A program made the translations under genes and the position numbers. Positions 4,930 through 31,743 of a DNA stretch of 64,000 bases are shown here, piece by piece; position 1 is the stretch's first letter; each line of letters starts with the position of its first letter. The stretch spans positions 1-64,000 of IMG/VR virus record IMGVR_UViG_3300049460_000128; one strand, written 5' to 3'. The notes under the pieces were generated by a model. The model saw only the letters and a program-made list of their open reading frames with translations. It was not told the DNA's origin and did no database searches.

Positions 4930-5574
4930 TTAAGCTGGGTCTGTTACCGTTACCGCGATAGTAGCAGTCACGGTATTCAGTGCAGTGCTCGTGATCGTAA
5001 TCGTTGCCGAACCAGCAGCTACCGCAGTCACCAGACCGCTTGCTGATACAGTTGCAAAGCCAGTTGCGGACGACGTGTAGGTGACAGTCTGAACAGCACC
5101 AGCCGGAACAACCGAGGCAGTGATCTGACTGGTGTCACCGACCACCAGAGTCATAGTGGCTGGTGAACGTGTGATGCTAGTTGGAGCAGGTGGTGGGGTT
5201 GGTACCACTTCCAGAGCTGCTTGAGTTGCCGATGCCGAACCAAGAGTCCACGACAGAGTTGAGCCATCAGTTGTGTTGCACGAAGCCGACATCAGTTTCG
5301 ATACGTAACGAACAGTGCTCGATGCATCAGTGATCTGGATGGTTGCTTGACCAGCAGCCAACGAGGTTGCTTGTGCGGTGGTGACCACGAGGTCAACGGT
5401 GAACATGTTTGTGCCGTCAGCGGTAACCAGGTACTTGACTGGACCCAGTTGCTTGACGATGTAGCCGGTTACGACTGCGGTGCCGTTATGGAAACGAACA
5501 CGAATTTTACCTGGCTCTGCGCCAAAGTTTGAGTTGTTGATTGGACGACCCATAAGTATCTCCTGAAAAGCCAT
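4930..5574 (-). CDS. virion protein with C-terminal Ig-like (Big_2) domain
   Basis: TLVVGDTSQITASVVP...VTYTSS...ATVSASGLVTAVAAGSATITIT; TAAATA late-type motif upstream. Confidence 0.8.
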   Translation of the reverse strand: MAFQEILMGRPINNSNFGAEPGKIRVRFHNGTAVVTGYIVKQLGPVKYLVTADGTNMFTVDLVVTTAQATSLAAGQATIQITDASSTVRYVSKLMSASCNTTDGSTLSWTLGSASATQAALEVVPTPPPAPTSITRSPATMTLVVGDTSQITASVVPAGAVQTVTYTSSATGFATVSASGLVTAVAAGSATITITSTALNTVTATIAVTVTDPA

Positions 5575-5630
5575 TTCGCAATGACATGATTATGAGGTAT
5601 TTATGACTTTTCAGTGAATCGTCGCTGAGG

Positions 5631-5858
5631 TTATTTGCCCACAAATCCTTCGGCTTTGATGGCCATACGTTCACGCCCCATAGCCTTCAGGAGACGATCG
5701 GCGCAGGAATGATGCAGCTCAACTTGATAGTGTGTGTGACGGCCAATAGTCGCCGTCGCGGAGGAGATCACCTGCCCATGGAATTCTGGTACCGGACTGT
5801 TATTGGCGATGGTCTCGATAGGATGACCACATGCGTCGCAAATGACTTGGATTGCCAT
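5631..5858 (-). CDS. small Zn-binding hypothetical protein
   Basis: MAIQVICDACG...HHSC; AAGGA RBS. Confidence 0.65.
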   Translation of the reverse strand: MAIQVICDACGHPIETIANNSPVPEFHGQVISSATATIGRHTHYQVELHHSCADRLLKAMGRERMAIKAEGFVGK

Positions 5859-5866
5859 GATATTCC

Positions 5867-6004
5867 TTAGTCGACTAGATGATAGGTGAAATAGATATGA
5901 CTGCCGTTTTGGCGTGTCATTTTGCGAGTGCGAGGATGTGCAAGACCACCCAGGGTACAAAAGTACAAGTAGGTGATTTGGTTTGCTGTCGTGCAAGGCA
6001 TCAT
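5867..6004 (-). CDS. 45-aa hypothetical protein (not in ORF track)
   Basis: TAAGGAG RBS then MMPCTTANQITYLYFCTLGGLAHPRTRK...; directly after promoter. Confidence 0.6.
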   Translation of the reverse strand: MMPCTTANQITYLYFCTLGGLAHPRTRKMTRQNGSHIYFTYHLVD

Positions 6005-6025
6005 GCGCTCCTTAATAGATGTTCC

Positions 6026-6054
6026 ATTATAGAGCCACATGAACGAAAAATCAA
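6026..6054 (-). promoter_or_regulatory. sigma70-type promoter with operator variant
   Basis: TTGATT-17-TATAAT; spacer ends CGTTCATGTGGCTC. Confidence 0.7.
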
Positions 6055-6188
6055 CTATTGTCTTTCCCTCGATTCGTCTTGATGATGAACCAGAAATTCA
6101 GTCCACACGTTAGTACCAGGGCAATTGTTGCCACCGTGACTTGGAAAACTACGCCCGCGCACTCGGCCATCATTACTTGAATTTCCAT
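6051..6188 (-). CDS. small membrane protein
   Basis: MEIQVMMAE..., one hydrophobic stretch, GGAG RBS. Confidence 0.5.
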   Translation of the reverse strand: MEIQVMMAECAGVVFQVTVATIALVLTCGLNFWFIIKTNRGKDNS

Positions 6189-6247
6189 ACAAGTGTCTCC
6201 TGTTATTTTCCACCAATATAGCATGATATGGTATTTAGAAGACAAAT

Positions 6248-6275
6248 AAAAAAGCCCGCCGAAGCGAGCTTTTTT
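6248..6275 (-). terminator. intrinsic terminator ending the tmRNA operon
   Basis: AAAAAAGCTCGC-TTCG-GCGGGCTTTTTT. Confidence 0.85.
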
Positions 6276-6280
6276 GAGAC

Positions 6281-6606
6281 TTGGATGATGAGGTATGTCT
6301 CTACCCCCACCGTTTAGGCTGCTACAGCCTGACGGAACGAAGAATCGTTTGCATTTACAACGTGCCGACTTTTATTTTCGTGAATCATCGACTTTCACGT
6401 GTTGTCATCTTCGGCTTATTCACCCTGTCGAAACCAGGTCAGGCCCATCATATAAGATTCTCTCGCTTACGTCTCGCGGGATACTGCGCTTTATCCTGAT
6501 AGTGGCCAGCGAAGTTTATCATGCGCTGCTGGTCTAACCTACCGAAAATCTATATGGTGGACCTGTGGGGAATCGAACCCCAGTCCAGAATGCCTCTACG
6601 TCCAAA
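6281..6606 (-). ncRNA. ssrA: tmRNA, circularly permuted (two-piece)
   Basis: Acceptor piece ...GGACTGGGGTTCGATTCCCCACAGGTCCACCA ends at 6555; coding piece starts GGGCCTGACCTGGTTTCGAC at 6446; G3:U70 pair; tag ORF 6352-6314 = ANDSSFRQAVAA*. Confidence 0.92.
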
Positions 6607-6668
6607 TCTGTCAGTTGCCTGACCACAACAATGTAATGCGCCTATCAGGCGGGGTAAGCCCCGTCATC

Positions 6669-6750
6669 AATGCGTATTGGTTAGAATACGTTTCCCCTGT
6701 GACCGCTCGAAGTGTCACCCCTGTACTCAGTACCCTAACCAATAAACATT
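6669..6750 (-). ncRNA. candidate small structured RNA
   Basis: Long closing helix AATGTTTATTGGTTAG/CTAACCAATACGCATT with two inner hairpins. Confidence 0.5.
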
Positions 6751-6759
6751 TGCAAAATC

Positions 6760-6898
6760 GTTTAAGCGTGAAGGGAGTCGAACCCTTGAGCGCCCTGCCG
6801 CTACGTTACCGTAGTGTCTGACTCGAACAGACCACTAGGCTCTCCATGCTCTAGTATGTACTCAACCGGGAGATGCCTACCACCCACTGGACCTAAAC
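6760..6898 (-). ncRNA. tRNA-like RNA with two T-loop hairpins
   Basis: 7-bp closing stem GTTTAGG/CTTAAAC; GTCTG-TTCGAGT-CAGAC and GGG-TTCGACT-CCC hairpins. Confidence 0.6.
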
Positions 6899-6936
6899 TT
6901 TTTGCTGGTGACACATTACTGCATCACCAAGACCAC

Positions 6937-6965
6937 AGTATATGGCAATCCATACATGCGGTCAA
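6937..6965 (-). promoter_or_regulatory. sigma70-type promoter of the ncRNA/tmRNA operon
   Basis: TTGACC-17-TATACT. Confidence 0.75.
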
Positions 6966-6984
6966 GCATTATTTACCACTTTGT

Positions 6985-7890
6985 TTAATTCATATGCGAA
7001 TAATCATCTGCCATATGAGTGCGCAGCTTCTTCAAAGCCGCCACCTCAATCTGACGAACACGTTCGCATGAAATATTGTACTTGTCTGCCATCGCCCGCA
7101 ACGGCACACCAGCCCCTTCATCATTTACCAGGAAACGTTGCTCGATGATATACTGCTCGCGTTCGTTCAACTTTTCCATGTACTTCTGGAGGCCGGTTGT
7201 CTGAAGTTCAACCATACGCATACTGGACAATACGTTGGTGGGTTCCAGCGTGTCGTCACTCAGATAATGGTATACGAAGTCATCCATATCAGCACTGTCA
7301 AGGAACTGATTGGTTGGAGGCACATCGATGGAGCTATCACCGCCACGCATACGCATTTCAACTTCACGCACGTCTTCTGGTCTGACCTCCAACGCATCAG
7401 CGGCCCATTTGATCTGTTCTTCGGTCATGCTGCGCCCTACTTCCAAACGACTACGCAGGTTGAAGAACAGCTTGCGATGAGCTTTGGTAGTGAAGCTTTT
7501 CACTATGCGAGAATTGCGAATCACATAGTCCATCATCTCTGCTTTGATCCAGGGAATCGCATAGGTGGCAAAACGCACATTCTGGGCGGGATCGAAGCGA
7601 TGAATTGCTTTCATCATTCCAATACTTCCTTCTTGAACTAGATCATCTTGGCTCATGCCGTAGAATTTCAATTGACGGGCTTGGCTCATGACCAAACGCA
7701 TATAGCTATGAGCCAGTGCGTCAATTGCCTTTTGATCATTGTTTCTCACTCGTACCCACAGCGCATCTTCTTGCGGCGGGGTAAGCATGGGAAACCGCAT
7801 GGCGGTGCTATGGTAATTGTCAATGCTGCTGAGGTTTACCGTAACACCAAGGTTCAATGGCTTATTAATACCAGTAGCGTCAAGTTTCAT
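6985..7890 (-). CDS. rpoH: RNA polymerase sigma factor, RpoH (sigma-32) family
   Basis: DLVQEGSIGMMKAIHRFDP, RFATYAIPWIKAE, RpoH box HRKLFFNLR, region 4 ISCERVRQIEVAALKKLR. Confidence 0.9.
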   Translation of the reverse strand: MKLDATGINKPLNLGVTVNLSSIDNYHSTAMRFPMLTPPQEDALWVRVRNNDQKAIDALAHSYMRLVMSQARQLKFYGMSQDDLVQEGSIGMMKAIHRFDPAQNVRFATYAIPWIKAEMMDYVIRNSRIVKSFTTKAHRKLFFNLRSRLEVGRSMTEEQIKWAADALEVRPEDVREVEMRMRGGDSSIDVPPTNQFLDSADMDDFVYHYLSDDTLEPTNVLSSMRMVELQTTGLQKYMEKLNEREQYIIEQRFLVNDEGAGVPLRAMADKYNISCERVRQIEVAALKKLRTHMADDYSHMN

Positions 7891-7919
7891 TCTTATTCTG
7901 CATTATTGTAAGTTCATGC

Positions 7920-7948
7920 AGTATAGAGCAACAATCACTTGACGTCAA
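7920..7948 (-). promoter_or_regulatory. sigma70-type promoter of rpoH-like gene
   Basis: TTGACG-17-TATACT. Confidence 0.65.
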
Positions 7949-7961
7949 TGCCGTATGAATA

Positions 7962-9020
7962 TTACATGCGAGAATTTGCCTCAACGGAGATATAGTTCTT
8001 CTCTTCAGTGGTCCAGCGCACTTTGACGTTCGGGTATTTTGCCTGAATTTCATCAACGATTTTCTGCATCTTGGCACCCCATTCGTCATCCAATTCTTCC
8101 CAGTCGTAGTCTTGTTCGTCACCATCTTCAAGTTCAGCATCGACCGGAATCTGCCAACCACCCCAGTTACGAACCTCGAAACTATAGCCCGTCCCTTCTT
8201 TTGCAATATCACGCCATTCACCAGTATAACCTGAACTATACCCAAGTTTTCCAGACGACATTGCCGATTTCATCAAGGAACGAATCCGTGATAAAACGTC
8301 TTGCATTTCTTGTGGTGATGCTTTGGCGATAGCCTGTGGTTCAGCTTTTGGCTTAGGTGCTTCTACGGGTTTTGGATCAGATTGATCTTTCAAGGCAAGA
8401 TTACCCTTACCATACGATACTCGCCCACGTCCTGGCACCATTTGAGAACTAGTCCATTCCCAACGCCCCAAAGGTTGATTGGTCTCTGGATTATAGTACA
8501 TGATGACTTGATTCTTCTTACCTGAACCATAGCTATGCAATGACGGCAAGTTAGGCGCATCAATATAGGCGATTGGAACATCGCCAAAGGTTTGCTTTAT
8601 AGCATCTTTAAGCTCCCGAATTTCAGTCCAACTGGTATATTCGTTAAATTTTGGATTGGTGGGCAATGGTGGAAGTTCTTTCTTGGGCTCGGGTTTTTGT
8701 TCCACGGCTTTCGGTTCAACTTTAGCTGCTGGTGCTTTCGTCGTTGGCGCCGCTTCTTTGCCTGGTTTCTTCGCAGGCATGAACGGTTCTTTGGCCAAGA
8801 CGTATTTGAATCCACCACCGTCTGGTGTTCGGAAACCCACAATACCAACTTTTGGATCCATGTAGTAAACCGCACCACCAGCTTGTGGCTTGCTTTCTTT
8901 CCACGCGGTAGCGCCCAGCTTACGTATGCCAGCTTCAAATTCAGCTTTGGAGGAGAGGGGATTTGCGAGGTCGAACTTGTTCTTGTAGTTCGCCTCGAGG
9001 ATGATTTGATTGTAACGCAT
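7962..9020 (-). CDS. putative internal head protein (modular, Pro/Ala/Lys linkers)
   Basis: N-term MRYNQIILE; TAAATA upstream. Confidence 0.65.
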   Translation of the reverse strand: MRYNQIILEANYKNKFDLANPLSSKAEFEAGIRKLGATAWKESKPQAGGAVYYMDPKVGIVGFRTPDGGGFKYVLAKEPFMPAKKPGKEAAPTTKAPAAKVEPKAVEQKPEPKKELPPLPTNPKFNEYTSWTEIRELKDAIKQTFGDVPIAYIDAPNLPSLHSYGSGKKNQVIMYYNPETNQPLGRWEWTSSQMVPGRGRVSYGKGNLALKDQSDPKPVEAPKPKAEPQAIAKASPQEMQDVLSRIRSLMKSAMSSGKLGYSSGYTGEWRDIAKEGTGYSFEVRNWGGWQIPVDAELEDGDEQDYDWEELDDEWGAKMQKIVDEIQAKYPNVKVRWTTEEKNYISVEANSRM

Positions 9021-9057
9021 GAAATACTCCCAATTAAGAGAGTATTTATCCGTGGCA

Positions 9058-9249
9058 TCAATCTACTGATTTGATGTTTTTCAATCGTTGCTGCTTGATT
9101 TCTTCTTCACGCTGGATTCCCCAACCGATCATTTGATCAGTAAATGCCTTGCGCATTGCAGGGTTTTCACGGAACTTTTTATCAAATCGCCAGACGAATG
9201 CTCGATAGACGATTTGATAGTCAAACCAGGCAATCAAGCGAGCGATCAT
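9058..9249 (-). CDS. hypothetical protein
   Basis: Start MIARLIAW directly after upstream stop. Confidence 0.6.
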   Translation of the reverse strand: MIARLIAWFDYQIVYRAFVWRFDKKFRENPAMRKAFTDQMIGWGIQREEEIKQQRLKNIKSVD

Positions 9250-9250
9250 A

Positions 9251-9616
9251 TTATGCCACAATGTTGTGACGTTCCATTGCGGCCTGGATGGCATCAAGGT
9301 CAACATGATGCCGTGCAATCGCACGTTTCAGTTCAGACATATACTTGATGTCCCAGAACAGATTGAATTCGTTTGGCAAGTGCGGATCGCGTGCTTGCGG
9401 GAAGTCGTTCAGTTCAGTGCGCGGTTTCCAGGACTTGAATTCGTCCATGGATACAGTATGGCCACCAGCCTCATCGTCGAAGTAATAATGGATGCGTTGT
9501 TTGGCACCATCATAGCCATAGGTCTTTGCAATACGACCACATGGTAGTTCATAAAAAATACCTACGGTATTCATTGTTATCTTTCTTGCCTCTTTGGGCA
9601 TGTTGTAATTCGTCAT
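9251..9616 (-). CDS. hypothetical protein
   Basis: 121-aa ORF in operon. Confidence 0.7.
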   Translation of the reverse strand: MTNYNMPKEARKITMNTVGIFYELPCGRIAKTYGYDGAKQRIHYYFDDEAGGHTVSMDEFKSWKPRTELNDFPQARDPHLPNEFNLFWDIKYMSELKRAIARHHVDLDAIQAAMERHNIVA

Positions 9617-9675
9617 GAGACGTCATGGTTCGTCACCAGTGCGACAAACATTAACGGGATGACCCAAGTGTCAGA

Positions 9676-9960
9676 TTAGTCTCGCCACTCGCCTATACCA
9701 TCCCAATTGGATGATAACACAGTTCTGGCAACTGAGCGAGCTACTGGATGATTGAAACGTGGATCGGATATGATGGCATAGAAGACGTCCTGCATGTCTT
9801 CCAGATTTGGCGGGAGTTGTTGACCGAATTGACGTACTTCGTTTTTGAATTGAGCAATCTGCGCACGATTGTGGGTTTTAAGCACTTCATAATCGCAGAT
9901 CACACACTCCATGAGAATGAAGAAGTCGATGACGTAATATAGACGTTCCTGAGAGATCAC
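9676..9960 (-). CDS. hypothetical protein
   Basis: GTGA overlap with upstream gene. Confidence 0.65.
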   Translation of the reverse strand: MISQERLYYVIDFFILMECVICDYEVLKTHNRAQIAQFKNEVRQFGQQLPPNLEDMQDVFYAIISDPRFNHPVARSVARTVLSSNWDGIGEWRD

Positions 9961-10169
9961 AGTGTAATCAACTCCGTGGTTTCGCCTGTTTTCGGATCAC
10001 GCCACATCACCTTGCTACCAGCGTCTTGGTGGGCAAGGATCGTCGCCTGCAAGGCCAGGGCTTTGCGCACGACTTCGGTGTATGATGATGCTTCGGTTTT
10101 GTCCTTGAGACGTTTTAACCGGTCGTATGCACTTGCGGGTAATTCCAATTGAACACGCGTCTTAGCCAT
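9957..10169 (-). CDS. ribbon-helix-helix (CopG-like) DNA-binding protein
   Basis: MAKTRVQLELPASAYDRLKRLKDKTEASSYTEVVRKAL. Confidence 0.75.
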   Translation of the reverse strand: MAKTRVQLELPASAYDRLKRLKDKTEASSYTEVVRKALALQATILAHQDAGSKVMWRDPKTGETTELITL

Positions 10170-10434
10170 TGTGTTGCTCCGGCCACAATTCATTGATACG
10201 TGCGATGAACAGATCAATGTCGCGGAATACTTCGTCAGGGTTGGAGAAGGCGATGCAGTCTTCTTGACTTGACCGCCACAGTCCATATACGTTCAGGATT
10301 GGGCGATGTGCAATGGTGTATTCTTGCCCATTGTATTGGAAGTCGAAAAACGCCTCAGCATTTGGATCATATGCACCATCGCGTATGATCGTTAAGTGGG
10401 GCAGCTCCGCTTTCAACCTATCATCAATTTTCAT
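10162..10434 (-). CDS. hypothetical protein
   Basis: Start MKIDDRL; the longer ORF start runs into the tRNA-like RNA. Confidence 0.65.
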   Translation of the reverse strand: MKIDDRLKAELPHLTIIRDGAYDPNAEAFFDFQYNGQEYTIAHRPILNVYGLWRSSQEDCIAFSNPDEVFRDIDLFIARINELWPEQHNG

Positions 10435-10449
10435 AACTGCCTTTTTGTT

Positions 10450-10626
10450 AGGCACCCCGGGTGGAATCGAACCACCGACCCTTCGATTAAATATCGACCG
10501 CTCTATCGTCAAAACTATTCAACAGGTCAACAGCGGGACGTCACTCGCTATCTTGCTGTCTAGCCGTTTATTCAATTCCACCGGCGACCGTCGTCACCTT
10601 ATGTGGTACCTCTGAGCTACGGGGCA
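10450..10626 (-). ncRNA. tRNA-like RNA (Lys-UUU-like) with ~110-nt D-loop
   Basis: GCCCCG-TA-GCTC...GAGC, anticodon loop TATTTAA, GGTGG-TTCGATT-CCACC, CGGGGT; ends CCT rather than CCA. Confidence 0.7.
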
Positions 10627-10665
10627 TTGCTTGGTTAAAAGATGATTGCTCATCTCTTGAATTCT

Positions 10666-10826
10666 TGGCGTCAACTGCCGGATTCGAACCGGACGACGGA
10701 ATACACTTTTGACCTCTATGAGGCGGGTATGCCCTTACTTTCACCGTTAGGCTGTCCACTTCTGCCCATGCCATTCAGCAAAGACATATCTGCGGCGTTC
10801 GTTCTGCCAGACTGAACTAAGTCAAC
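10666..10826 (-). ncRNA. tRNA frame with anticodon arm replaced by ~105-nt insert
   Basis: Acceptor GTTGACT/AGTTGAC-G-CCA, D arm GTTC-AGTCTGGCA-GAAC, T arm CCGG-TTCGAAT-CCGG. Confidence 0.75.
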
Positions 10827-10828
10827 AA

Positions 10829-10933
10829 GTATGGCGGGGAATTGAACCTCCAGTCCAAAATGAGCAGCACCATGGCGCCGTTTCACTTGGCCCTAGTTTC
10901 CTAGGCTGCTTCCCAAAGCAGCGTCGACCATAC
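10829..10933 (-). ncRNA. tRNA/tmRNA-TLD-like structured RNA
   Basis: GTATGGT/GCCATAC stem, GGACTGGAGG-TTCAATT-CCCC T-arm, three hairpins including CCTAG-GAAA-CTAGG. Confidence 0.55.
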
Positions 10934-11087
10934 AATGTGGGTTGGAGTAACTTGGCGATTTAATCCGGGACTCTGCATTCTTGCCCGACTTCATGTTTCG
11001 CCACCTGAAAGCTAGTTTGTCTAGTCCTCACCACGGAGTCAATAGTACAGCAAACCACGGAAGTTCGCAACACTATTGACACCACAT

Positions 11088-11939
11088 TCACTTGCGGGGT
11101 TTCTTTATTGCACTGAAAAGTAGCATCAATGCAACACCGGTAAGGAACATCACCCAACTTTCAGGCTCTGGAACAGGAGTCGTAATGGGTGGAGTGACGA
11201 TTGGCGGAACAATCGGTGGAGTAATTACAATGCAGCAACCACCGCCACCACCACCGCCATTGTCGATCGGGCTCCACGGAGTGAATCCGTGCCAACCGTT
11301 ACCGCCAGGATTCACCAATGAATTGTTGGGCTCACCTGAGCCAGTAGTGATACTCCCTGGGGCAACATTTGACGCACCACCACCCCCGCCTCCGCCACCA
11401 CCTTCAGTTGGTTCTGCGGGTTGTTCAGCTTGTGCTTGAGCAACTTCAGCAGTTTCACCACCACCTTTATGTGAACCAGTAGTTACCTGGGTTTCCGGCA
11501 ACCGCTTCACACGGCTGATATTTTGGCAAATAGTTGGTACCAGGATACAAGTTTCGCCCTCGCAGTACACCAATGCTTCCTCTTTACGAGTGGGTGACCA
11601 TTTGTCACGAGTTGTTGCCAGACAGATTTGCGGCTTAGCACTCTTGCCACCAAAGTGCATATCGGTGATGGTCGACTCATATGCGTGGATGCCAGTAATT
11701 CGATCTTTCGTGATGGTCACGACTTCATCGAACTGCTTTTTCTCCAAACGCTGTTTGAACTTAGCCCGCAGTTCAGGCGAAAGATCACGATAATGATCAA
11801 TCGCATTCGAGACGGCGCCCTTGTAGGGATTGACACCTGGGTTGTCCCACGAACAGGTGTCAAGTATTACCGCTTGGGAACTGGCCATGGTCCCCAGGAA
11901 CAAAAGTCCCATCAATGCCTTAAAAAGTTTCATATACAA
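11088..11939 (-). CDS. MHFG-type PEP-CTERM surface protein
   Basis: Signal peptide, CSWDNPG, DMHFGG, Gly-rich linker, C-term VPEPESW + TM helix + KKPRK. Confidence 0.85.
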   Translation of the reverse strand: MYMKLFKALMGLLFLGTMASSQAVILDTCSWDNPGVNPYKGAVSNAIDHYRDLSPELRAKFKQRLEKKQFDEVVTITKDRITGIHAYESTITDMHFGGKSAKPQICLATTRDKWSPTRKEEALVYCEGETCILVPTICQNISRVKRLPETQVTTGSHKGGGETAEVAQAQAEQPAEPTEGGGGGGGGGASNVAPGSITTGSGEPNNSLVNPGGNGWHGFTPWSPIDNGGGGGGGCCIVITPPIVPPIVTPPITTPVPEPESWVMFLTGVALMLLFSAIKKPRK

Positions 11940-12040
11940 TTCCTCAATTGGTTGCCCTATATATCATATGGCGCAATCGAATGGTATATTAAAATTATGC
12001 TAATTCATAAAACCAAATCATCAACTATTTGATATTTGCC

Positions 12041-12069
12041 TTGATCTGGCAACCAAATGAATGTATCAT
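12041..12069 (+). promoter_or_regulatory. sigma70-type promoter with operator motif
   Basis: TTGATC-17-TATCAT; spacer ends CAACCAAATGAATG. Confidence 0.7.
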
Positions 12070-12091
12070 GTATTCATTAACTGGAGGGAAT

Positions 12092-12520
12092 ATGAAAACC
12101 ATCTCGGCAACGGTAACTCAATATCAAGCAGATGACGGCACGCCATTCGACAGCGAAGCGGCATGCAAGCTGTACGAGGATGAACTGAAACGCACCTCCT
12201 ACTGGATCGTGTACTTCAATCCAGACCTCACGGAAGGGCGGGGCACGCAGTATTCCACGGCATTCAGTGTGGTCACGCCATACGGCAAGAGTGATGCGCA
12301 AATGTGGATGACGGACTACTGCATGCAGAAACATGGTCGCCCAGTGGCATTCGTGCAAGGCGCATCGCCATGCCCAAACTGGACTCTGAGTGAGCTCGAT
12401 CGCAAAGCATACGAAGCCCACAAGGCCCGTACTCCTGATCGTTACAACCAGCACACGGTTGGCGTGTTGAAGCTGAAAGGTGACGACAAGCTGCACTACG
12501 CCTTGACCTTGGTCAAATAG
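12092..12520 (+). CDS. hypothetical phage protein
   Basis: GGAGG RBS, MKTISAT...YQADDGTPFDSEAACKLYE...PDLTEGRG. Confidence 0.8.
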   Translation: MKTISATVTQYQADDGTPFDSEAACKLYEDELKRTSYWIVYFNPDLTEGRGTQYSTAFSVVTPYGKSDAQMWMTDYCMQKHGRPVAFVQGASPCPNWTLSELDRKAYEAHKARTPDRYNQHTVGVLKLKGDDKLHYALTLVK

Positions 12521-12524
12521 TCGT

Positions 12525-12552
12525 AAAAAAGCCCCTAGGCTAGGGGCTTTTT
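12525..12552. terminator. bidirectional intrinsic terminator
   Basis: AAAAAAGCCCCTAG-G-CTAGGGGCTTTTT between convergent units. Confidence 0.85.
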
Positions 12553-12555
12553 GTT

Positions 12556-12709
12556 TGGTGGCGAGAGGAGGGGTCGAACCTCCAATGTGCTACACATTGA
12601 CAAATATGCGTGCTCGAGGATCCGGATCCAATTGGCCGCCCTACACTCGTCAACTTAGAACACTCTCCAGCTCATCGGCTGGCGTATCTACCAATTCTAC
12701 TACCCCGCC
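12556..12709 (-). ncRNA. tRNA frame with ~80-nt variable-region insert and 6-nt anticodon loop
   Basis: GGCGGGG/TCTCGCC-A-CCA, D arm with AATTGGTAGA, CCAGC-CGATGA-GCTGG, GGAGG-TTCGACC-CCTCC. Confidence 0.75.
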
Positions 12710-12712
12710 TAA

Positions 12713-13062
12713 AATGTAATGGTGGATGACCGTTGGTGTGCTATTACGCCCAATGCTCAACGGGTCTTGTACGACATCGCGCTTACTCTAATCCCTTTAC
12801 CCTCAGCGCTTACCTAGGGGCCGTTATCCTTCGGCATCCTGTAGTCATGGGCTACGCCCCATAACATGATGACCAATTTCCTGCCAGCTGGGAAATTGTT
12901 GCCATCTTATCGTACAAACTGTACTTGTCCTTCCCCGGTGGATTATGCGCGATGATTGCCACCATCTGAAGCTGGGATCGCTTCCGCCCTTATCCACTTT
13001 GCAACTCTTTAAAGGATGGCTGCTTCTAAGCCCACCTTCCAAAAGTCATCCACCATTACATT
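12713..13062 (-). ncRNA. structured RNA containing a split mimic of 23S rRNA H43/H44 (GTPase-associated centre)
   Basis: Perfect 18-bp terminal helix; GGCTTAGAAGCAGCCATCCTTTAAAGAG (13032-13005) and GCGTAATAGCACAC (12749-12736). Confidence 0.85.
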
Positions 13063-13063
13063 C

Positions 13064-13280
13064 ATGTGCTTTGTTGGGCACCATCCGCCACCCCCATCGG
13101 GTCAGCATCCACAGCGGGATTACTAGGGACTCGAACCCTTCTTCGCTTGACTGTACGGGCCAAGCTAGTACGCTATCATGAACCATCTGCATCACTTACC
13201 GCGAATAGGCGATGTTTCCCGTTCATGCTTCCCAAATTAATGGTTTTTCACGTAGACGACTGATGTCCAACAAAGCACAT
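13064..13280 (-). ncRNA. structured RNA with T-loop hairpin
   Basis: 14-bp closing helix ATGTGCTTTGTTGG/CCAACAAAGCACAT; AGGG-TTCGAGT-CCCT; starts just after promoter. Confidence 0.7.
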
Positions 13281-13287
13281 ACATGAC

Positions 13288-13316
13288 ACTATACTGCTGG
13301 TTCAGCTACCAGTCAA
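13288..13316 (-). promoter_or_regulatory. sigma70-type promoter of ncRNA operon
   Basis: TTGACT-17-TATAGT. Confidence 0.75.
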
Positions 13317-13340
13317 GCATTCTTTTCTGGTAGCTGAACC

Positions 13341-13700
13341 TTAAATGTCCCACGGATTAGCCCAACGCTGATATTTGCGATCATCGATGAAGTCCCGCAG
13401 GTCTGGCTCATAGTCGGGATTCTGGAGGTGACGCACCAGTTCGTGCTCGTTATGAGCCCTTGCCGAATTCTTGCCACCCTTCACAGCATACCAACCATAG
13501 TATTTCTTGCTGTCGCGATGAAAGCGCCAGTAGCCTTCATCCAACTCTTTACCAGTCTTCCAAATGCGTGGGAAAGCCCACACGGTATCATGGCGACCGG
13601 AATTACCATTCCACTCATCTGGGATGGTGGTCAGGTACCTTTTAATGTTGCTGCTGCGCCCGATGCGCTTTTCGCCTTTACGGCGGATGGTTCGACTCAT
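13341..13700 (-). CDS. small basic hypothetical protein
   Basis: MSRTIRRKGEKR...; GGAG RBS inside a hairpin. Confidence 0.75.
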   Translation of the reverse strand: MSRTIRRKGEKRIGRSSNIKRYLTTIPDEWNGNSGRHDTVWAFPRIWKTGKELDEGYWRFHRDSKKYYGWYAVKGGKNSARAHNEHELVRHLQNPDYEPDLRDFIDDRKYQRWANPWDI

Positions 13701-13723
13701 GTTAGATCTCCAGTAATGGTAAC

Positions 13724-13762
13724 CTAACGAGTCGATTTCTCCTTGTATGCGTACACTTTCAT
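13724..13762 (-). CDS. putative 12-aa leader peptide
   Basis: GGAG RBS, MKVYAYKEKSTR-TAG; stop overlaps hairpin covering next RBS. Confidence 0.45.
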   Translation of the reverse strand: MKVYAYKEKSTR

Positions 13763-13808
13763 GTTTCGCTCCAGTTTGCCGCCAATCAGGCTAGCAGGTT
13801 AAAAAAAT

Positions 13809-13942
13809 GCACTGACTTTATCCTCCGCGGCGTATCAATCCTTTCGGACTAACCCACGAATGTGGGTGATCGGCGCGCTGCTATGGTCAACCCATAGTGA
13901 GGTGCTACAAGTCTAGCTTGGGTGGCATAACCTCCCCAGTGC
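13809..13942 (-). ncRNA. candidate structured RNA
   Basis: GCACTG/CAGTGC closing stem followed by U-tract; multiple hairpins. Confidence 0.55.
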
Positions 13943-13947
13943 CAAAG

Positions 13948-14074
13948 TGGATGCTGAATTTACCGCGTATCGACCTAGCTGGCTTACGGGGAGCAACTCA
14001 GTTACTCGCCACCACTGGTCACGTGGTGCAACAATTCTAGCATGGGGCAAACACTACGTCAGCCCCTGCATCCA
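13948..14074 (-). ncRNA. candidate structured RNA
   Basis: TGGATGC/GCATCCA closing stem right after promoter; multiple hairpins. Confidence 0.55.
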
Positions 14075-14083
14075 ACATGTTCA

Positions 14084-14112
14084 ATAATACGGCAAATGGT
14101 TCATTGAGTCAA
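14084..14112 (-). promoter_or_regulatory. sigma70-type promoter
   Basis: TTGACT-17-TATTAT. Confidence 0.7.
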
Positions 14113-14168
14113 GTGAATATTTCAACAATGTTGATAAGATGTTGCTCTGGTGCTGAATAGCCAGTCTA

Positions 14169-14579
14169 ATGGCAATTTTAGGAACTATCATGACTCCCAT
14201 CATTATCTTACTGGTGCTCATCCAGTTGAAACACTACCTCTGCGACTTTCCGCTGCAAACCCAAAATCATCTATCCACGAAGGGCATCTACGGCAATCTG
14301 GGTGGTATCAGCCACAGCGTCAATCATGGACTTGGTACCTATGTGGTGTTTGCCATCATGGGGCTTGGTATGGTTGAAAACAATCTGCAACTAGCGATCA
14401 TCATGGGTTTGATCGATGCTGTGATTCATTATCACATTGACTGGATCAAGACTCGCTTCGGACAAAAGGACATAACGAAAAAATCGTTCTGGAATCAACT
14501 GGGGCTGGATCAATTGGCACATCAACTCACGTATGTGCTGATCATTGGCTTGTATTTTAACGAGATCTTGAAATCCTGA
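14169..14579 (+). CDS. DUF3307-like membrane protein
   Basis: KHYLCDFPLQ...HSVNHG...HYHIDWIK...GLDQLAH. Confidence 0.8.
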   Translation: MAILGTIMTPIIILLVLIQLKHYLCDFPLQTQNHLSTKGIYGNLGGISHSVNHGLGTYVVFAIMGLGMVENNLQLAIIMGLIDAVIHYHIDWIKTRFGQKDITKKSFWNQLGLDQLAHQLTYVLIIGLYFNEILKS

Positions 14580-15061
14580 TTCTGGCTATTTCTGACTAGA
14601 AATCAATCAAGTTTCAAAATACCTACCTGGAGTTTACGACATCAGGTGTTCGATTTCTGACATAATTCTTCAAGAAATGATATTTCGATGATCCTCATCT
14701 TCCTCAAGAAGATCTCTATCATTGGTTATAGTTCGTGAAGACTATAAGGGGTTTGGTATATGGCTAGTATTCCCATATGGCGTATGTGTGATGCCTTAGT
14801 GAGTTGTAGTTGGTTGGTTACCTATCGTAGTTTCAATATCCACCTTATGGGTTTTGTTGGAGTTCGGGATATCAATTATGCTATTCGAGTTTTCTATAAG
14901 GGGTTTGAGGATCGGTTGAGTGGTAGTGGTATTTGTGTAAGGAGTTGTGTATGGGCGGGTGGTCCTTCGTGTGAGTTGATTGTGAGTTTGTGTGGTAGTT
15001 CGAGTATATTGAGTGATGACGAGTGGATTCGGGTAGTATTTTTATTGGGGCGGTAAGAGAT

Positions 15062-15259
15062 ATGATTGCGGAGATTGTGTATCAGAAGTATCGTCATGGT
15101 GATTCGATCAATGATGACGATGTTCTTCGTGGACTTGAGGTTTATTTGAGTGCTCAGGCGGCGTTACGGGGATTTGGTCCTGTGTTTCGTTTGAGTATAG
15201 AGGAGATTGATCGTGTGGTGGTATGGTTGACTGATATTCGTGCAGTGCGACGGTTATGA
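15062..15259 (+). CDS. hypothetical protein
   Basis: MIAEIVYQKY..., weak RBS. Confidence 0.5.
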   Translation: MIAEIVYQKYRHGDSINDDDVLRGLEVYLSAQAALRGFGPVFRLSIEEIDRVVVWLTDIRAVRRL

Positions 15260-15325
15260 CTATGGTTCGTCATAGATCGTCACCAGTGTGTCGTGTAGAT
15301 TTCTTTAGTGTGTTGGGGTAGGGTC

Positions 15326-15601
15326 ATGTTATCTACGGTATGGGAGTTGATTGGTGAGGTTTGGCTGTATTTGTTTTCAATGCCCAGATTAATCGTGTAT
15401 GCGACTATTCCGGTCGCATTTGTGCTTTTGGGTAAATGGTTGTATGACAATCGCCGTATACCGAATTCTATAGTGATTCAGGATATCACATATGGTGCAG
15501 CGTCGTTCAATTGTGTAGTGGTTATGATTAAAGTTGATGGTAAGTGGCGTCCTGCTGTGAGTCAGGACATTGTGCATTTACCGCCTTGGGAGATGAAATG
15601 A
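15326..15601 (+). CDS. hypothetical membrane protein
   Basis: Hydrophobic segment; ATGA overlap with next gene. Confidence 0.55.
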   Translation: MLSTVWELIGEVWLYLFSMPRLIVYATIPVAFVLLGKWLYDNRRIPNSIVIQDITYGAASFNCVVVMIKVDGKWRPAVSQDIVHLPPWEMK

Positions 15602-16074
15602 CAGAAGATCAAATGGTAGTAATAAGGAAAGCTCTTGACAATGATGATATCGAGCTAGTTAACAGCATTGTGGGGCCGTTGTTGGAGATCAATCCCAACG
15701 ATGTTGATGCTTTGTTTCTTCGTTCCACCTATACGATGGGTGATGAGACCGAGGAGGAGTTTGCGCTTCGTACTGTTGCGATGATGACGCGTGCCTGTGA
15801 TTTGGGTTATGCGCCAGCTCAGTACCAGATGGCGGTATGGTTGCATGCTGGTGAGATTATGGCCGCAGATTTAAATCGTTCTGGTCATTTTGCGAAACTT
15901 GCGAGTGATGCCAAGTATCCGCCAGGTATGTTTGAGCATGGGCGGAATGTTTTTCATGGCACACATGGTAATATCAAGGATGAGCGAGCGGGGATTTCTT
16001 TGATTGAAAAAGCGGCAATGATGGGTGATTCTGATGCTGCTTTGTGGATGCTTACCGTGGTATACGACGCGTAA
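15598..16074 (+). CDS. Sel1/TPR repeat protein
   Basis: RACDLGYAPAQYQMA, LASDAKYPPGMFEHG, KAAMMGDSDA. Confidence 0.8.
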   Translation: MTEDQMVVIRKALDNDDIELVNSIVGPLLEINPNDVDALFLRSTYTMGDETEEEFALRTVAMMTRACDLGYAPAQYQMAVWLHAGEIMAADLNRSGHFAKLASDAKYPPGMFEHGRNVFHGTHGNIKDERAGISLIEKAAMMGDSDAALWMLTVVYDA

Positions 16075-30895: not shown

Positions 30896-31743
30896 ATTGC
30901 CCTCGGCGGAATAGGTATGTCCATTTCAGTAAGTTGGCGGCAATATAGATCCCATATGAGATCACTACACTGGATCAAGGTGGGATTTTCTCGTATACGC
31001 TTAGCCACTTCTTCGTAACTATTTACGTCTTTTTCCATTACGCCGCACCCAAACAACACTTCGCATATCTGATCAGGATTGTCCCAATGATGTTCACCCA
31101 GATACAATAGCTCTGGGAATAAGGTTGAGAAGTCAGGAGCCACTGCATCGGTCACTCGTACCATTGTTGCAGTAAAGCCATGCCCGTCTTTGCGTGGTGG
31201 GCACCATCTTGCACCATAATGCAAACCAGTATCACTCATGAGTGTATACCCAATTCTAGCCACAACTCGACCATCCCTGATTGCAGTCACACTGAGGGCT
31301 TTTGCGACGGCTTTGATCAGTTGAGTTCTATGACTGCCAGCATAGTTACTAGTTGAGGGATGTGGTGCCCAATTGGTGAATTGCAATAAGGTGGCATTGC
31401 CTATCATGAAGTCAACTTGGCAGAACTTCCGACCCTTTGTATTCGGTATTGCGACCCTACTGTACACTTGGCTGAACTGTGGCTGCACCTTCACGTTATC
31501 TTGACCAAAGGCAGTCTTGAGACGATCAATGAAATCCACGTATGAGTATTCCTTGTGATTGACTGCTAGATCAATATCGCCGCATATTGATTTCTTGCCC
31601 GTACTTCCCAGCAATGTGAAATTGATTGGGTTTACGAGCTTCCGTTTGATAGAGCGAATCACACTGGGAATCAGTGTCGCATCTATGGGTTTTGTGTTGT
31701 TAAATGCGTTACCGCCCATTGATGATTCCATTAAGTTGATCAC
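30892..31743 (-). CDS. nucleotidyltransferase (Pol beta superfamily)
   Basis: MGGNAF, LLGSTGKK..GDIDL, QVDFM. Confidence 0.75.
   Translation of the reverse strand: MINLMESSMGGNAFNNTKPIDATLIPSVIRSIKRKLVNPINFTLLGSTGKKSICGDIDLAVNHKEYSYVDFIDRLKTAFGQDNVKVQPQFSQVYSRVAIPNTKGRKFCQVDFMIGNATLLQFTNWAPHPSTSNYAGSHRTQLIKAVAKALSVTAIRDGRVVARIGYTLMSDTGLHYGARWCPPRKDGHGFTATMVRVTDAVAPDFSTLFPELLYLGEHHWDNPDQICEVLFGCGVMEKDVNSYEEVAKRIRENPTLIQCSDLIWDLYCRQLTEMDIPIPPRAI

What the first reader, a model, noticed from the sequence alone, without database searches (positions are those of the whole stretch)
10450..10626. tRNA-Lys-like frame with a 110-nt structured D-loop
Seen: the D stem GCTC/GAGC encloses 10504-10613 instead of about 8 nt. 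The insert contains nested helices (CCAC/GTGG, GGTGAC/GTCGCC, AGCG/CGCT). The T arm is perfect, the anticodon loop is TA-TTT-AA (A at position 33) and the end is CCT. Bacterial tRNA introns are self-splicing and much longer, so this does not fit a normal intron. Inference: a tRNA scaffold with cargo, or a tRNA-Lys decoy (tRNA-Lys(UUU) is the PrrC target).
Basis: partly seen in the sequence, partly recalled or inferred. Interest (0 to 1): 0.72.

Follow-up and report, generated by a model that had tools for sequence, protein, structure and literature searches.

The report
Phage tRNA-Lys frame carrying conserved RNA module
A jumbo phage of soil bacteria encodes a complete tRNA-Lys-shaped RNA whose D-loop carries a conserved, folded module of about 103 nt (104-112 nt in relatives); the module appears in an RNA-library contig without being spliced out, so this looks like a natural "tRNA with cargo" rather than an intron or a dead gene.

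Summary
The element lies on the minus strand, 10626 to 10450. It has a full tRNA frame whose D stem encloses 110 nt instead of about 8.

With the insert deleted in silico, ARAGORN calls tRNA-Lys(UUU). It does the same for four relatives. Three are syntenic phage contigs. The fourth is a 194-nt contig from a soil metatranscriptome, colinear with the element and with no gap at the insert.

Across these lineages the tRNA frame is 81-99% identical. The insert is only 51-59% identical, yet it keeps its length and its two-hairpin architecture.

- Two loops are invariant: the C-GACG-G tetraloop and the GAGUGACGUCCC loop.
- 18 of 42 modelled pairs show compensatory changes (7.6 expected; 0 of 500 shuffles reach this).
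- The anticodon loop UAUUUAA, including the abnormal A33, is also invariant.

No group I core, splicing endonuclease or RtcB was found.

Three neighbouring elements are also tRNA-shaped with large inserts, and they have no usable anticodon loop.

Best reading: a functional, unspliced tRNA-derived chimeric RNA. The tRNA body would give processing, stability and recognition, and the insert would be a second binding module. I think it more likely acts as a bait or regulator in tRNA-centred phage-host conflict than as a routine decoder. Its function is untested. It is a new variant of a known kind.

The parts
10450..10626 (-). E1, the whole tRNA-Lys(UUU)-type RNA with the D-loop module (177 nt)
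   Evidence: Sequence read. Homologs at L096:2646-2834, L099:4008-4188 and L098:8552-8739 score 171-194 bits against model R1. An RNA-library contig is colinear with 10447-10640.
10620..10626 (-). Acceptor stem, 5' strand (UGCCCCG). It pairs with 10453-10459 (CGGGGUG). The tail CCU is at 10450-10452.
   Evidence: The acceptor covaries across relatives: 4 of the 6 modelled pairs change on both sides and 100% of cells are paired. L096 and L098 have a perfect 7 bp stem plus G73 plus CCA.
10607..10617 (-). D stem 5' strand GCUC (10614-10617) and the 5' part of the D-loop, AGAGGUA, which holds A14, G15, G18 and G19
   Evidence: This stretch is nearly invariant (one variable position, AG-N-GGU) in all relatives.
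10578..10606 (-). Insert hairpin A. It has an outer helix CCAC/GUGG and an inner helix GGUGAC/GUCGCC. The inner helix is capped by the invariant tetraloop GACG (10589-10592).
   Evidence: The same hairpin is predicted independently in 5 sequences. Pairs anchored on the loop are kept with A-U, G-U and G-C exchanges. See also helices 3 and 4.
10506..10575 (-). Insert hairpin B, a long irregular hairpin capped by the invariant loop GAGUGACGUCCC (10535-10546)
   Evidence: The four pairs below the loop are paired in 5 of 5 sequences, with 3 different pair types at each of three positions. Helices 5 and 6 carry 9 pairs with changes on both sides. The loop motif occurs once in the 296.6-kb record, once in each relative's fetched locus (L096, L098, L099), and once in the reconstructed X2 contig.
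10500..10505 (-). 3' end of the D-loop (U, then A21) and the D stem 3' strand GAGC
   Evidence: A21 and GAGC are invariant.
10482..10498 (-). Anticodon arm: GUCGA, loop UAUUUAA (10487-10493), UCGAA. The anticodon UUU is at 10489-10491 and A33 at 10492.
   Evidence: The loop is invariant in 5 sequences. Pair 31-39 switches between A-U and G-C. ARAGORN reads it as Lys(ttt).
10460..10481 (-). Variable loop GGGUC and T arm GGUGG-UUCGAUU-CCACC
   Evidence: Conserved in relatives.
10666..10826 (-). E2, a neighbouring tRNA-shaped RNA. It has normal acceptor, D and T arms and ends in GCCA. A multi-helix domain of about 105 nt replaces the anticodon loop.
   Evidence: Conserved in L096 and L099, absent in L098.
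10829..10933 (-). E3, a neighbouring tRNA-shaped RNA. It has a GAAA tetraloop where the anticodon loop should be, and a long extra arm.
   Evidence: Weak tRNA-Sec-like match of 24.2 bits. Conserved, with a covarying stem, in L096 and L099.
12556..12709 (-). E4, a tRNA-shaped RNA with a variable arm of about 80 nt and an ACCA end. Its anticodon loop is not conserved.
   Evidence: Rfam tRNA match of 31.5 bits. In the alignment with L096 and L098 the loop is 6, 7 or 11 nt long, while the long arm is conserved.

Best explanation
E1 is a functional tRNA-derived chimeric RNA of a jumbo phage. Its host is probably a Burkholderiales bacterium.

**What the sequences show**
- E1 has a complete Lys(UUU)-type tRNA body.
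- A structured module of two hairpins is grafted into the D-loop. It sits just after G18-G19-U20 and before A21. It is about 103 nt in the window and 104-112 nt by a common measure in all five sequences.
- The module stays in the RNA.

**What I infer**
- The RNA is probably transcribed in one precursor with the adjacent tRNA-shaped RNAs E3 and E2.
- The tRNA body would let RNase P and the 3'-end enzymes cut it out. It would also give the L-shape and stability, and present a Lys-type anticodon arm.
- The two invariant loops of the insert would be a second binding surface, for a protein or for another RNA.
- The insert emerges next to the elbow that the ribosome and RNase P contact. U33 is replaced by an invariant A. 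The sister RNAs in the locus have no anticodon loop. For these reasons I think it more likely acts as a bait, competitor or regulator for a factor that reads tRNA-Lys than as an everyday decoder. Such a factor could be an anticodon nuclease, a synthetase or a modification enzyme.
For: **The frame is a real tRNA**
- After in-silico removal of the insert, ARAGORN calls tRNA-Lys(UUU) in all five lineages at its default threshold.
- All tertiary-interaction nucleotides are present and invariant.

**Conservation**
- Syntenic homologs were found in three Logan phage contigs.
- A fourth lineage comes from a soil metatranscriptome.
- The frame is 81-99% identical. The insert is 51-59% identical but keeps a length of 104-112 nt.

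**Structure under selection**
- 95.1% of cells are paired, against 83.6 +/- 2.0 in shuffles (0 of 500 reach it).
- 18 pairs change on both sides, against 7.6 +/- 2.0 in shuffles (0 of 500), and against 3-5 when partners are slid.
- The same two-hairpin fold is predicted separately in each sequence.
- The loops GACG and GAGUGACGUCCC are invariant.

**The insert is not removed**
- A 194-nt contig from an RNA library matches 10447-10640 with 18 substitutions and no gap.
- No joints were reported in that run.
- In 4.4 kb laid, real matches in that run fall only on E1, E2 and E3.

**The anticodon arm matters**
- The loop UAUUUAA is invariant and its stem covaries.
- In sister element E4 the corresponding loop varies freely.

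**Locus context**
- E2, E3 and E4 are tRNA-shaped RNAs with inserts at other positions.
- The locus also holds a permuted tmRNA and a look-alike of a 23S rRNA fragment.

**Precedent**
- An engineered tRNA carrying the Spinach aptamer in the variable loop (183 nt in total) is stable and active in translation (PMC5397188).
Against: - No function was tested, and no binding partner is identified.
- The RNA evidence is one low-depth contig (depth 2.9) from a relative. DNA carry-over in that library cannot be excluded, and assembled contigs drop rare forms such as a spliced product.
- There are only four independent DNA lineages plus one RNA contig. The pair counts come from an alignment fitted to the model's own structure.
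- An invariant UUU loop, intact tertiary nucleotides and a G73-CCA end in two lineages would fit a real decoding tRNA equally well.
- An engineered D-loop insertion between positions 16 and 18 was unstable in E. coli. D-loop grafts are therefore not automatically tolerated.
Confidence: 0.55

Rival explanations
1. E1 is a genuine decoding tRNA-Lys(UUU) with an expanded elbow. It would be charged by the host LysRS and used on the ribosome. The insert and the A33 change might make it resistant to, or invisible to, host anticodon nucleases.
For: - The full tRNA frame and the invariant UUU loop are present, and ARAGORN calls Lys.
- L096 and L098 have a perfect acceptor with G73 and CCA.
- The phage uses AAA for 53% of its Lys codons. 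Its probable host clade is GC-rich and would favour AAG; this last point is an inference.
- A tRNA carrying the Spinach aptamer in its variable loop still works in translation.
- Anticodon-loop changes in phage tRNAs have been proposed as a way to evade tRNA nucleases (PMC10264068).
Against: - A33 replaces the near-universal U33 in every lineage.
- Pair 27-43 is a G.A mismatch.
- The insert emerges one nucleotide after G19, at the elbow that ribosomal sites contact. That contact is established structural knowledge, not tested here.
- The 3' end is CCU in the window and CCC in L099, and the acceptor is degraded in those two lineages.
- The sister RNAs E2, E3 and E4 cannot decode.
- G73 is the Asn-type discriminator, not the Lys-type.
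Confidence: 0.25
2. The tRNA body is only a processing and stability handle. The insert alone is the effector, acting as a small RNA, an aptamer or a protein sponge unrelated to tRNA biology.
For: - E4 behaves this way: its anticodon loop drifts while its long extra arm is conserved.
- Engineered tRNA scaffolds work on this principle (own knowledge; for a tRNA fusion).
- The insert has invariant loops.
Against: In E1, the 7-nt anticodon loop and all tRNA core nucleotides are invariant, while the insert stems diverge to 51-59% identity. A mere handle would not need a fixed Lys-type loop.
Confidence: 0.12
3. The insert is removed after transcription. Either it is an intron that is spliced and religated, or it is an intervening sequence cut out without ligation. 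The second route would leave a two-piece tRNA, like the two-piece tmRNA of the same phage.
For: - The phage encodes an RNA ligase family protein (PF09414, 26.1 bits, just under the 27-bit cut-off).
- It has a permuted, two-piece tmRNA gene.
- Hairpin B is long enough to be a candidate double-strand RNase substrate (inference).
Against: - Rfam gives no group I or group II match at E up to 10.
- No helix joins the two insert boundaries, so there is no bulge-helix-bulge motif.
- The record holds no EndA or RtcB, though it is only 70% complete.
- The RNA-library contig spans the insert with no gap, and no joint was reported.
- Invariant apical loops are not expected in a segment that is discarded.
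Confidence: 0.07
4. E1 is a tRNA pseudogene disrupted by an insertion.
For: Standard tRNA finders miss it. The window copy has an imperfect acceptor and a CCU end.
Against: - Insert position, length and fold are conserved across lineages that share only about 74% of nucleotides in the region.
- Compensatory changes are frequent and two loops are invariant.
- The element is present in an RNA library.
- Flanking genes come and go while E1 stays.
Confidence: 0.01

Closest known systems
Canonical phage tRNA-Lys(UUU) and tRNA-Asn(GUU) genes, for example in Ralstonia phage RsoM2USA and Salmonella phage SSU5
   Same: - The cloverleaf frame and the tertiary nucleotides match.
- The 3' half is 82-83% identical to phage tRNA-Asn genes.
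- With the insert removed, ARAGORN calls Lys.
   Different: - The D-loop is 110 nt instead of 7-11 nt.
- A33 replaces U33.
- The discriminator is G73 with a UUU anticodon.
- The intact sequence falls below the detection thresholds of ARAGORN and Rfam.
Engineered tRNA fusions: the Spinach-tRNA fusion (Masuda et al. 2017, PMC5397188) and recombinant tRNA scaffolds (own knowledge)
   Same: A folded RNA module of about 100 nt is carried by a tRNA body. The total length is about 180 nt, and the body provides processing and stability.
   Different: - These constructs are man-made.
- The tolerated graft site was the variable loop, or the anticodon stem in scaffolds.
- A D-loop graft between positions 16 and 18 was not stably expressed. 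E1's graft lies after position 20 and is natural and conserved.
Intron-containing tRNA genes: bacterial group I introns in the anticodon loop, and archaeal bulge-helix-bulge introns at non-canonical positions including the D-loop
   Same: A tRNA gene is interrupted by extra sequence. Archaeal introns can sit in the D-loop (own knowledge).
   Different: - There is no group I core.
- There is no bulge-helix-bulge motif.
- No splicing endonuclease or RtcB was found.
- The insert is retained in the RNA contig.
- The apical loops of the insert are conserved.
tmRNA, including the permuted two-piece tmRNA at 6247-6645 in this window
   Same: It is a tRNA-like module fused to a large functional RNA domain, it is phage-encoded, and it lies in the same locus and on the same strand.
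   Different: tmRNA has no anticodon arm, and its extra domain lies between the acceptor halves. E1 keeps all four arms and matches no tmRNA model.
Bacterial Y RNAs (YrlA) with a tRNA-like module (own knowledge)
   Same: It is a non-coding RNA that mimics the tRNA acceptor, T and D arms and is sometimes phage-encoded.
   Different: In Y RNAs the 5' and 3' ends form a Ro-binding stem. In E1 the ends form a normal acceptor stem. No Ro (TROVE) gene was found, and Rfam gives no match.
GOLLD and ROOL, large ornate RNAs found beside phage tRNA genes (own knowledge)
   Same: They are structured non-coding RNA of unknown function, physically tied to phage tRNA clusters.
   Different: They are 500-800 nt stand-alone RNAs. 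E1's module is about 103 nt and sits inside a tRNA. Rfam gives no match.

Membership tests
Canonical tRNA (Rfam RF00005 / ARAGORN) | Cloverleaf with acceptor, D, anticodon and T arms and the conserved tertiary nucleotides | tested here: met
   All arms and the nucleotides U8, A14, G18, G19, A21, C48 and U54-A58 are present and conserved.
Canonical tRNA (Rfam RF00005 / ARAGORN) | Size of 70-95 nt with a D-loop of about 7-11 nt, scoring above the family's gathering cut-off | tested here: not met
   The element is 177 nt with a 110-nt D-loop. The Rfam match is local at 21.7 bits, below the 29-bit cut-off. ARAGORN finds nothing on the intact sequence.
Canonical tRNA (Rfam RF00005 / ARAGORN) | 7-nt anticodon loop with U33 | tested here: not met
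   The loop is 7 nt, but position 33 is A in all five sequences.
Canonical tRNA (Rfam RF00005 / ARAGORN) | Aminoacylation and use in decoding | not testable with these tools
   This needs acid-gel or periodate assays and ribosome-binding assays.
tRNA gene with a group I intron | Group I catalytic core (P3-P9), more than about 200 nt, inserted in the anticodon loop | tested here: not met
   Rfam gives no intron match at E up to 10 over 5500-16000. The insert is about 103 nt, consists of two simple hairpins, and lies in the D-loop.
Archaeal-type tRNA intron (bulge-helix-bulge) | Bulge-helix-bulge motif across the two exon-intron boundaries | tested here: not met
   Constrained folds of five sequences show two independent hairpins and no helix joining the boundaries.
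Archaeal-type tRNA intron (bulge-helix-bulge) | Splicing endonuclease (PF01974) and RtcB-type ligase available | tested here: not met
   Neither is found in the 296.6-kb record. The record is about 70% complete and the host genome is unknown, so this is weak negative evidence.
Any spliced intron | A joined (insert-less) form present in RNA | tested here: inconclusive
   No joint was seen, and a colinear unspliced contig is present. The data are low-depth assembled contigs, which drop rare forms.
Natural tRNA-scaffold chimera (working definition: a tRNA body plus a conserved structured module that is retained in the RNA) | Module conserved in position, size and fold, with covariation | tested here: met
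Natural tRNA-scaffold chimera (working definition: a tRNA body plus a conserved structured module that is retained in the RNA) | Module retained in the mature RNA | tested here: inconclusive
   One 194-nt contig from an RNA library spans the module. The mature ends were not mapped.
Anticodon-nuclease decoy (for example for PrrC-type enzymes) | Binding to, or cleavage by, a tRNA-Lys-specific nuclease, and protection of host or phage tRNA | not testable with these tools
   The only evidence is indirect: an invariant Lys-type loop with A33. The host and its nucleases are unknown.
Bacterial Y RNA (YrlA) | Ro-binding terminal stem and an associated Ro (TROVE) protein | tested here: not met
   The ends form a tRNA acceptor stem. 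No TROVE gene was found and Rfam gives no match.

The most novel reading that the evidence does not exclude
This clade of jumbo phages makes a set of natural tRNA-scaffold RNAs. Each is a tRNA body carrying a functional RNA module at a different position: the D-loop in E1, the anticodon loop in E2, and the variable arm in E3 and E4.

E1 would be the first natural tRNA with a structured D-loop domain of about 100 nt that is still recognised as tRNA-Lys. It would either be charged and used, or it would serve as a bait that disarms a tRNA-Lys-targeting defence.
Probability: 0.3. Interest if true: 0.85.

Novelty: new variant of a known kind. Interest (0 to 1): 0.72.

Why it matters
- tRNAs are regarded as size-locked molecules. 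The authors of an engineered 183-nt tRNA fusion noted that it exceeded the length of any natural tRNA. A conserved natural tRNA-Lys frame of about 180 nt with a folded D-loop domain would show that nature also uses the tRNA body as a carrier.
- It would give a concrete natural design for a graft site after position 20.
- tRNA-Lys is a recurrent target of anti-phage nucleases. The invariant but abnormal Lys loop therefore makes this RNA a testable candidate for a new kind of counter-defence or tRNA-mimic regulator.
- Standard annotation misses these genes entirely, so similar elements may be common in large phages.

Tried and rejected
**Searches for more relatives that gave nothing**
- `search for related loci` with the 90-aa ORF next to E1 found no relatives. 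In the 5.8-billion protein set that ORF matches only itself. It is a window-specific gene that is absent in L096.
- Exact and gapped DNA patterns from E1 were scanned in IMG/VR, JGI metagenomes and GTDB genomes. They returned nothing or chance hits in coding or GC-rich DNA.

**More distant jumbo phages**
- Relatives found through the terminase (about 55% amino-acid identity) have no DNA homolog of E1.
- Model R1 searched in XacN1, RsoM2USA, Phosso, Atu_ph07 and a 417-kb IMG/VR phage matched only ordinary tRNAs. The long matches checked turned out to be two adjacent tRNAs or a tRNA with flanking sequence.

**Technical dead ends**
- MAFFT's structure-aware modes are not installed, so I used loop-anchored counts and a model-based alignment instead.
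- `genome search` cannot read Logan contigs. The tRNA content of the three relatives' contigs is therefore unknown.

**Readings considered and rejected**
- Coding: the indels are not multiples of 3 and the stems covary.
- Group I or group II intron: see the membership tests.
- Archaeal-type intron: see the membership tests.
- Y RNA: see the membership tests.

**Intramolecular kissing interaction between the two loops**
- The GACG tetraloop is complementary to CGUC in the large loop.
- Both loops are invariant, so covariation cannot test this.
- A 4-nt loop is also a poor kissing partner.

Full report
**Where the window comes from**

The window is the first 64 kb of a 296.6-kb IMG/VR virus record that CheckV estimates to be about 70% complete.
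- By terminase, its nearest isolated relatives are tRNA-rich jumbo myoviruses: Sinorhizobium phage Phosso (62%), Agrobacterium phage Atu_ph07 (55%) and the PA5oct group.
- The phage carries an RpoH-like sigma factor closest to those of Burkholderiales.
- It has a two-piece tmRNA of the betaproteobacterial type and a PEP-CTERM protein.
- A betaproteobacterial soil host is therefore likely. This is an inference.
- The only DNA run that holds the region is a rhizosphere metagenome.

**Checking the observation**

On the minus strand, 10626 to 10450 reads as a tRNA in this order:
- acceptor 5' strand UGCCCCG, then U8 and A9
- D stem GCUC and the start of the D-loop, AGAGGUA
- about 103 nt of insert
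- U, A21 and the D stem 3' strand GAGC, then G26
- anticodon stem GUCGA, loop UAUUUAA, stem UCGAA
- variable loop GGGUC
- T arm GGUGG-UUCGAUU-CCACC
- acceptor 3' strand CGGGGUG and the tail CCU

ARAGORN finds no tRNA here. Rfam gives only a local sub-threshold match. If the insert is deleted in silico, ARAGORN at its default settings calls tRNA-Lys(UUU). This copy departs from a textbook tRNA in four ways:
- A33 replaces U33.
- Pair 27-43 is a G.A mismatch.
- The acceptor has two wobble pairs at the top, or only 6 bp in the other register.
- The 3' end is CCU rather than CCA.

**Relatives**

Pattern scans and the adjacent ORF found nothing useful. The neighbouring sigma factor led to three Logan contigs with the same gene order: L096, L099 and L098. 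Over the region, L096 and L099 are about 72-74% identical at the nucleotide level, and L098 matches in shorter pieces at about 66-83%. All three carry E1.

A fifth lineage comes from a soil metatranscriptome. One 194-nt contig matches 10447-10640 end to end, with 18 substitutions and no gap. I rebuilt it from the 15 substitutions that the tool listed.

**What is conserved in the tRNA frame**

- The frame is 81-99% identical between lineages.
- Its stems covary. The acceptor has 4 pairs with changes on both sides, and pair 31-39 switches between A-U and G-C.
- L096 and L098 have a perfect 7-bp acceptor followed by G73 and CCA. L099 has an A1xC72 mismatch and ends in CCC. The window lineage has lost one acceptor base pair and ends in CCU.
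- The 7-nt loop UAUUUAA is identical in all five sequences, including A33.

**What is conserved in the insert**

- The insert always begins after AG-N-GGU and ends before A21-GAGC. That places it in the variable pocket of the D-loop, just after G18 and G19.
- Its length is 104-112 nt, while its sequence identity between lineages is only 51-59%.
- Folded separately, each sequence gives the same two hairpins. Hairpin A is capped by the invariant C-GACG-G. The longer hairpin B is capped by the invariant GAGUGACGUCCC.
- The four pairs under the hairpin B loop are paired in 5 of 5 sequences, with three different pair types at three of the positions.

On an alignment fitted to model R1:
- 95.1% of cells are paired, against 83.6 +/- 2.0 in shuffles.
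- 18 of 42 pairs change on both sides, against 7.6 +/- 2.0 in shuffles. No shuffle of 500 reaches either value.
- Sliding the partners gives 3-5 such pairs.

Two caveats apply. There are only four DNA lineages, and the alignment leans towards the model's structure. A plain MAFFT alignment already gave 17 such pairs.

**Is the insert removed?**

Nothing says so.
- No group I or group II intron model matches.
- The two insert boundaries are not joined by a helix, so no bulge-helix-bulge motif exists.
- The record holds no splicing endonuclease and no RtcB. It does hold an RNA-ligase family protein at 31709-32638.
- The RNA-library contig contains the whole insert, and no joints were reported.
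- In that run, of 4.4 kb laid, real matches fall only on E1, E2 and E3. The only other piece is a 35-nt partial match in a low-complexity stretch at 11414-11448. This pattern fits stable RNAs better than DNA carry-over. Depth is low, though, and assembled contigs hide rare forms.
- Invariant apical loops are not what a discarded spacer would show.

**Locus context**

E1 is the last of three adjacent tRNA-shaped RNAs.
- E3 (10933-10829) has a GAAA tetraloop in place of the anticodon loop.
- E2 (10826-10666) has normal acceptor, D and T arms and a conserved CCA end. A domain of about 105 nt replaces its anticodon loop.
- E4 (12709-12556) lies upstream. It has an 80-nt conserved variable arm, while its anticodon loop varies in length and sequence.

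The locus therefore encodes a set of tRNA bodies with cargo at different positions. E1 is the only one with a conserved, readable anticodon loop. That contrast argues that E1's anticodon arm is itself functional and not just scaffolding.

**How it most likely works**

*Shown by the data*
- E1 is a conserved, structured chimeric RNA that is probably expressed.
- It consists of a complete tRNA-Lys-type body plus a two-hairpin module that stays in the RNA.

*Inferred*
- The tRNA body directs RNase P and 3'-end processing from a multi-RNA precursor. E3 and E2 are 2 nt apart. No terminator-like site separates E1 from the E2-E3 cluster (the scan's one hit in this stretch is an internal hairpin of E3), and none follows E1 before the next ORF.
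- The body also stabilises the RNA and presents a Lys-type anticodon arm.
- The two invariant loops bind a partner.

The module emerges one nucleotide after G19, beside the elbow used by the ribosome and by RNase P. That use of the elbow is established structural knowledge and was not tested here. U33 is replaced, and the sister RNAs cannot decode. For these reasons I favour a bait, competitor or regulator role towards a factor that reads tRNA-Lys.

A true decoding tRNA-Lys with an elbow expansion remains a serious rival:
- The phage uses AAA for 53% of its Lys codons.
- An engineered tRNA carrying Spinach in the variable loop still translates.
- Anticodon-loop changes in phage tRNAs have been proposed as a way to evade nucleases.

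**Comparison with known systems and novelty**

- **Canonical tRNA.** E1 works like a tRNA in frame, but it fails the size, D-loop and U33 criteria.
- **Introns.** It fails every tested criterion for group I and archaeal-type introns.
- **Other RNA classes.** It is not a tmRNA, Y RNA, GOLLD or ROOL.
- **Nearest functional analogue.** Engineered tRNA fusions come closest. There a D-loop graft between positions 16 and 18 failed and only the variable-loop graft worked.
- **Literature.** Full-text searches found no description of a natural tRNA with a structured D-loop domain, and none of these phage elements.

I rate it a new variant of a known kind, namely a tRNA-derived non-coding RNA, and of high interest. 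Its function is still open.

Noticed in passing
window 12713-13065 (-), with L095:1490-1735, L115:584-796, L116:546-798 and L117:~570-860: A structured RNA of about 350 nt (E5) lies here.
- It holds a near-exact copy of the 23S rRNA helix 43/44 sequences, the L11-binding GTPase-associated centre. These are GGCUUAGAAGCAGCCAUCCUUUAAAGAG and, further on, GGCGUAAUAGC.
- A variable domain splits the two pieces, and a long-range helix of about 25 bp closes the whole RNA.
- Unannotated homologs sit inside the tRNA arrays of Pseudomonas phages UNO-G1W1 and pf16 and just upstream of a tRNA-Met gene in Aeromonas phage 4_4572.
- Another homolog lies next to a 2'-5' RNA ligase gene in Xanthomonas phage XacN1.
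- No Rfam family matches it beyond a 39-nt rRNA fragment hit.
   Followed up: partly
window 10666-10826 (-), 10829-10933 (-), 12556-12709 (-): Three further tRNA-shaped RNAs (E2, E3, E4) carry large conserved inserts at the anticodon loop or the variable arm.
- E2 and E4 keep a CCA end.
- None of the three has a conserved 7-nt anticodon loop.
- E2 and E3 are missing in L098, where an ORF takes their place.
   Followed up: partly
window 10937-11034 (-): A conserved structured RNA of about 95 nt (E6) follows the PEP-CTERM gene and precedes E3.
- Its inner stem covaries: CGGG/CCCG, CGGA/UCCG, UGGA/UCCA and CUAG/CUAG.
- It is kept even in L098, where an ORF follows it instead of E3 and E2. It may be a leader or a riboswitch-like element.
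- Rfam gives no match.
   Followed up: partly
window 13070-13280 (-): Another conserved non-coding stretch lies upstream of E5 and contains a T-arm-like hairpin, GGGUUCGAGUCCC.
- It is 74-79% identical in L098 and L099.
- A good sigma-70-like promoter precedes it at 13316-13288 (TTGACT, 17-nt spacer, TATAGT).
   Followed up: no
window 6247-6645 (-) and 6740-6960 (-): A phage-encoded permuted (two-piece) tmRNA lies at 6247-6645, with the tag ANDSSFRQAVAA. It is conserved in L096, L098 and L099. The 220 nt just upstream of it hold two more T-arm-like hairpins, at 6832 and 6787.
   Followed up: partly
window 6985-7890 (-): A phage RpoH-type sigma factor lies here. It is 45-47% identical to RpoH of Burkholderiales such as Janthinobacterium and Castellaniella, and it is the best hint to the host.
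   Followed up: partly
window 31709-32638 (-): This protein matches the RNA ligase family PF09414 at 26.1 bits, just below the 27-bit cut-off. It has a KVDGS motif near the N-terminus. It may be relevant to tRNA repair.
   Followed up: no
window 11088-11933 (-): A secreted-looking phage protein ends in a PEP-CTERM sorting motif. It sits between the two groups of tRNA-like RNAs and is conserved in L098.
   Followed up: no
L114 (Xanthomonas phage XacN1, 30000-50000): Several annotated XacN1 tRNAs have long, class II-like variable arms of a kind normally seen only in Leu, Ser and Tyr tRNAs. They are Lys-CUU (87 nt), Gly (86 nt), Thr (91 nt), Cys (89 nt) and Asn (89 nt). Enlarged tRNAs therefore seem to be a trait of this group of jumbo phages.
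   Followed up: partly
G000:C1:255936-256092 (+), outside the window: The only canonical tRNA genes in the 296.6-kb record are two adjacent tRNAs with a CAU anticodon. A 417-kb relative carries more than 50 (54 Rfam tRNA matches above the cut-off). The missing 30% of this genome may hold a tRNA array.
   Followed up: no
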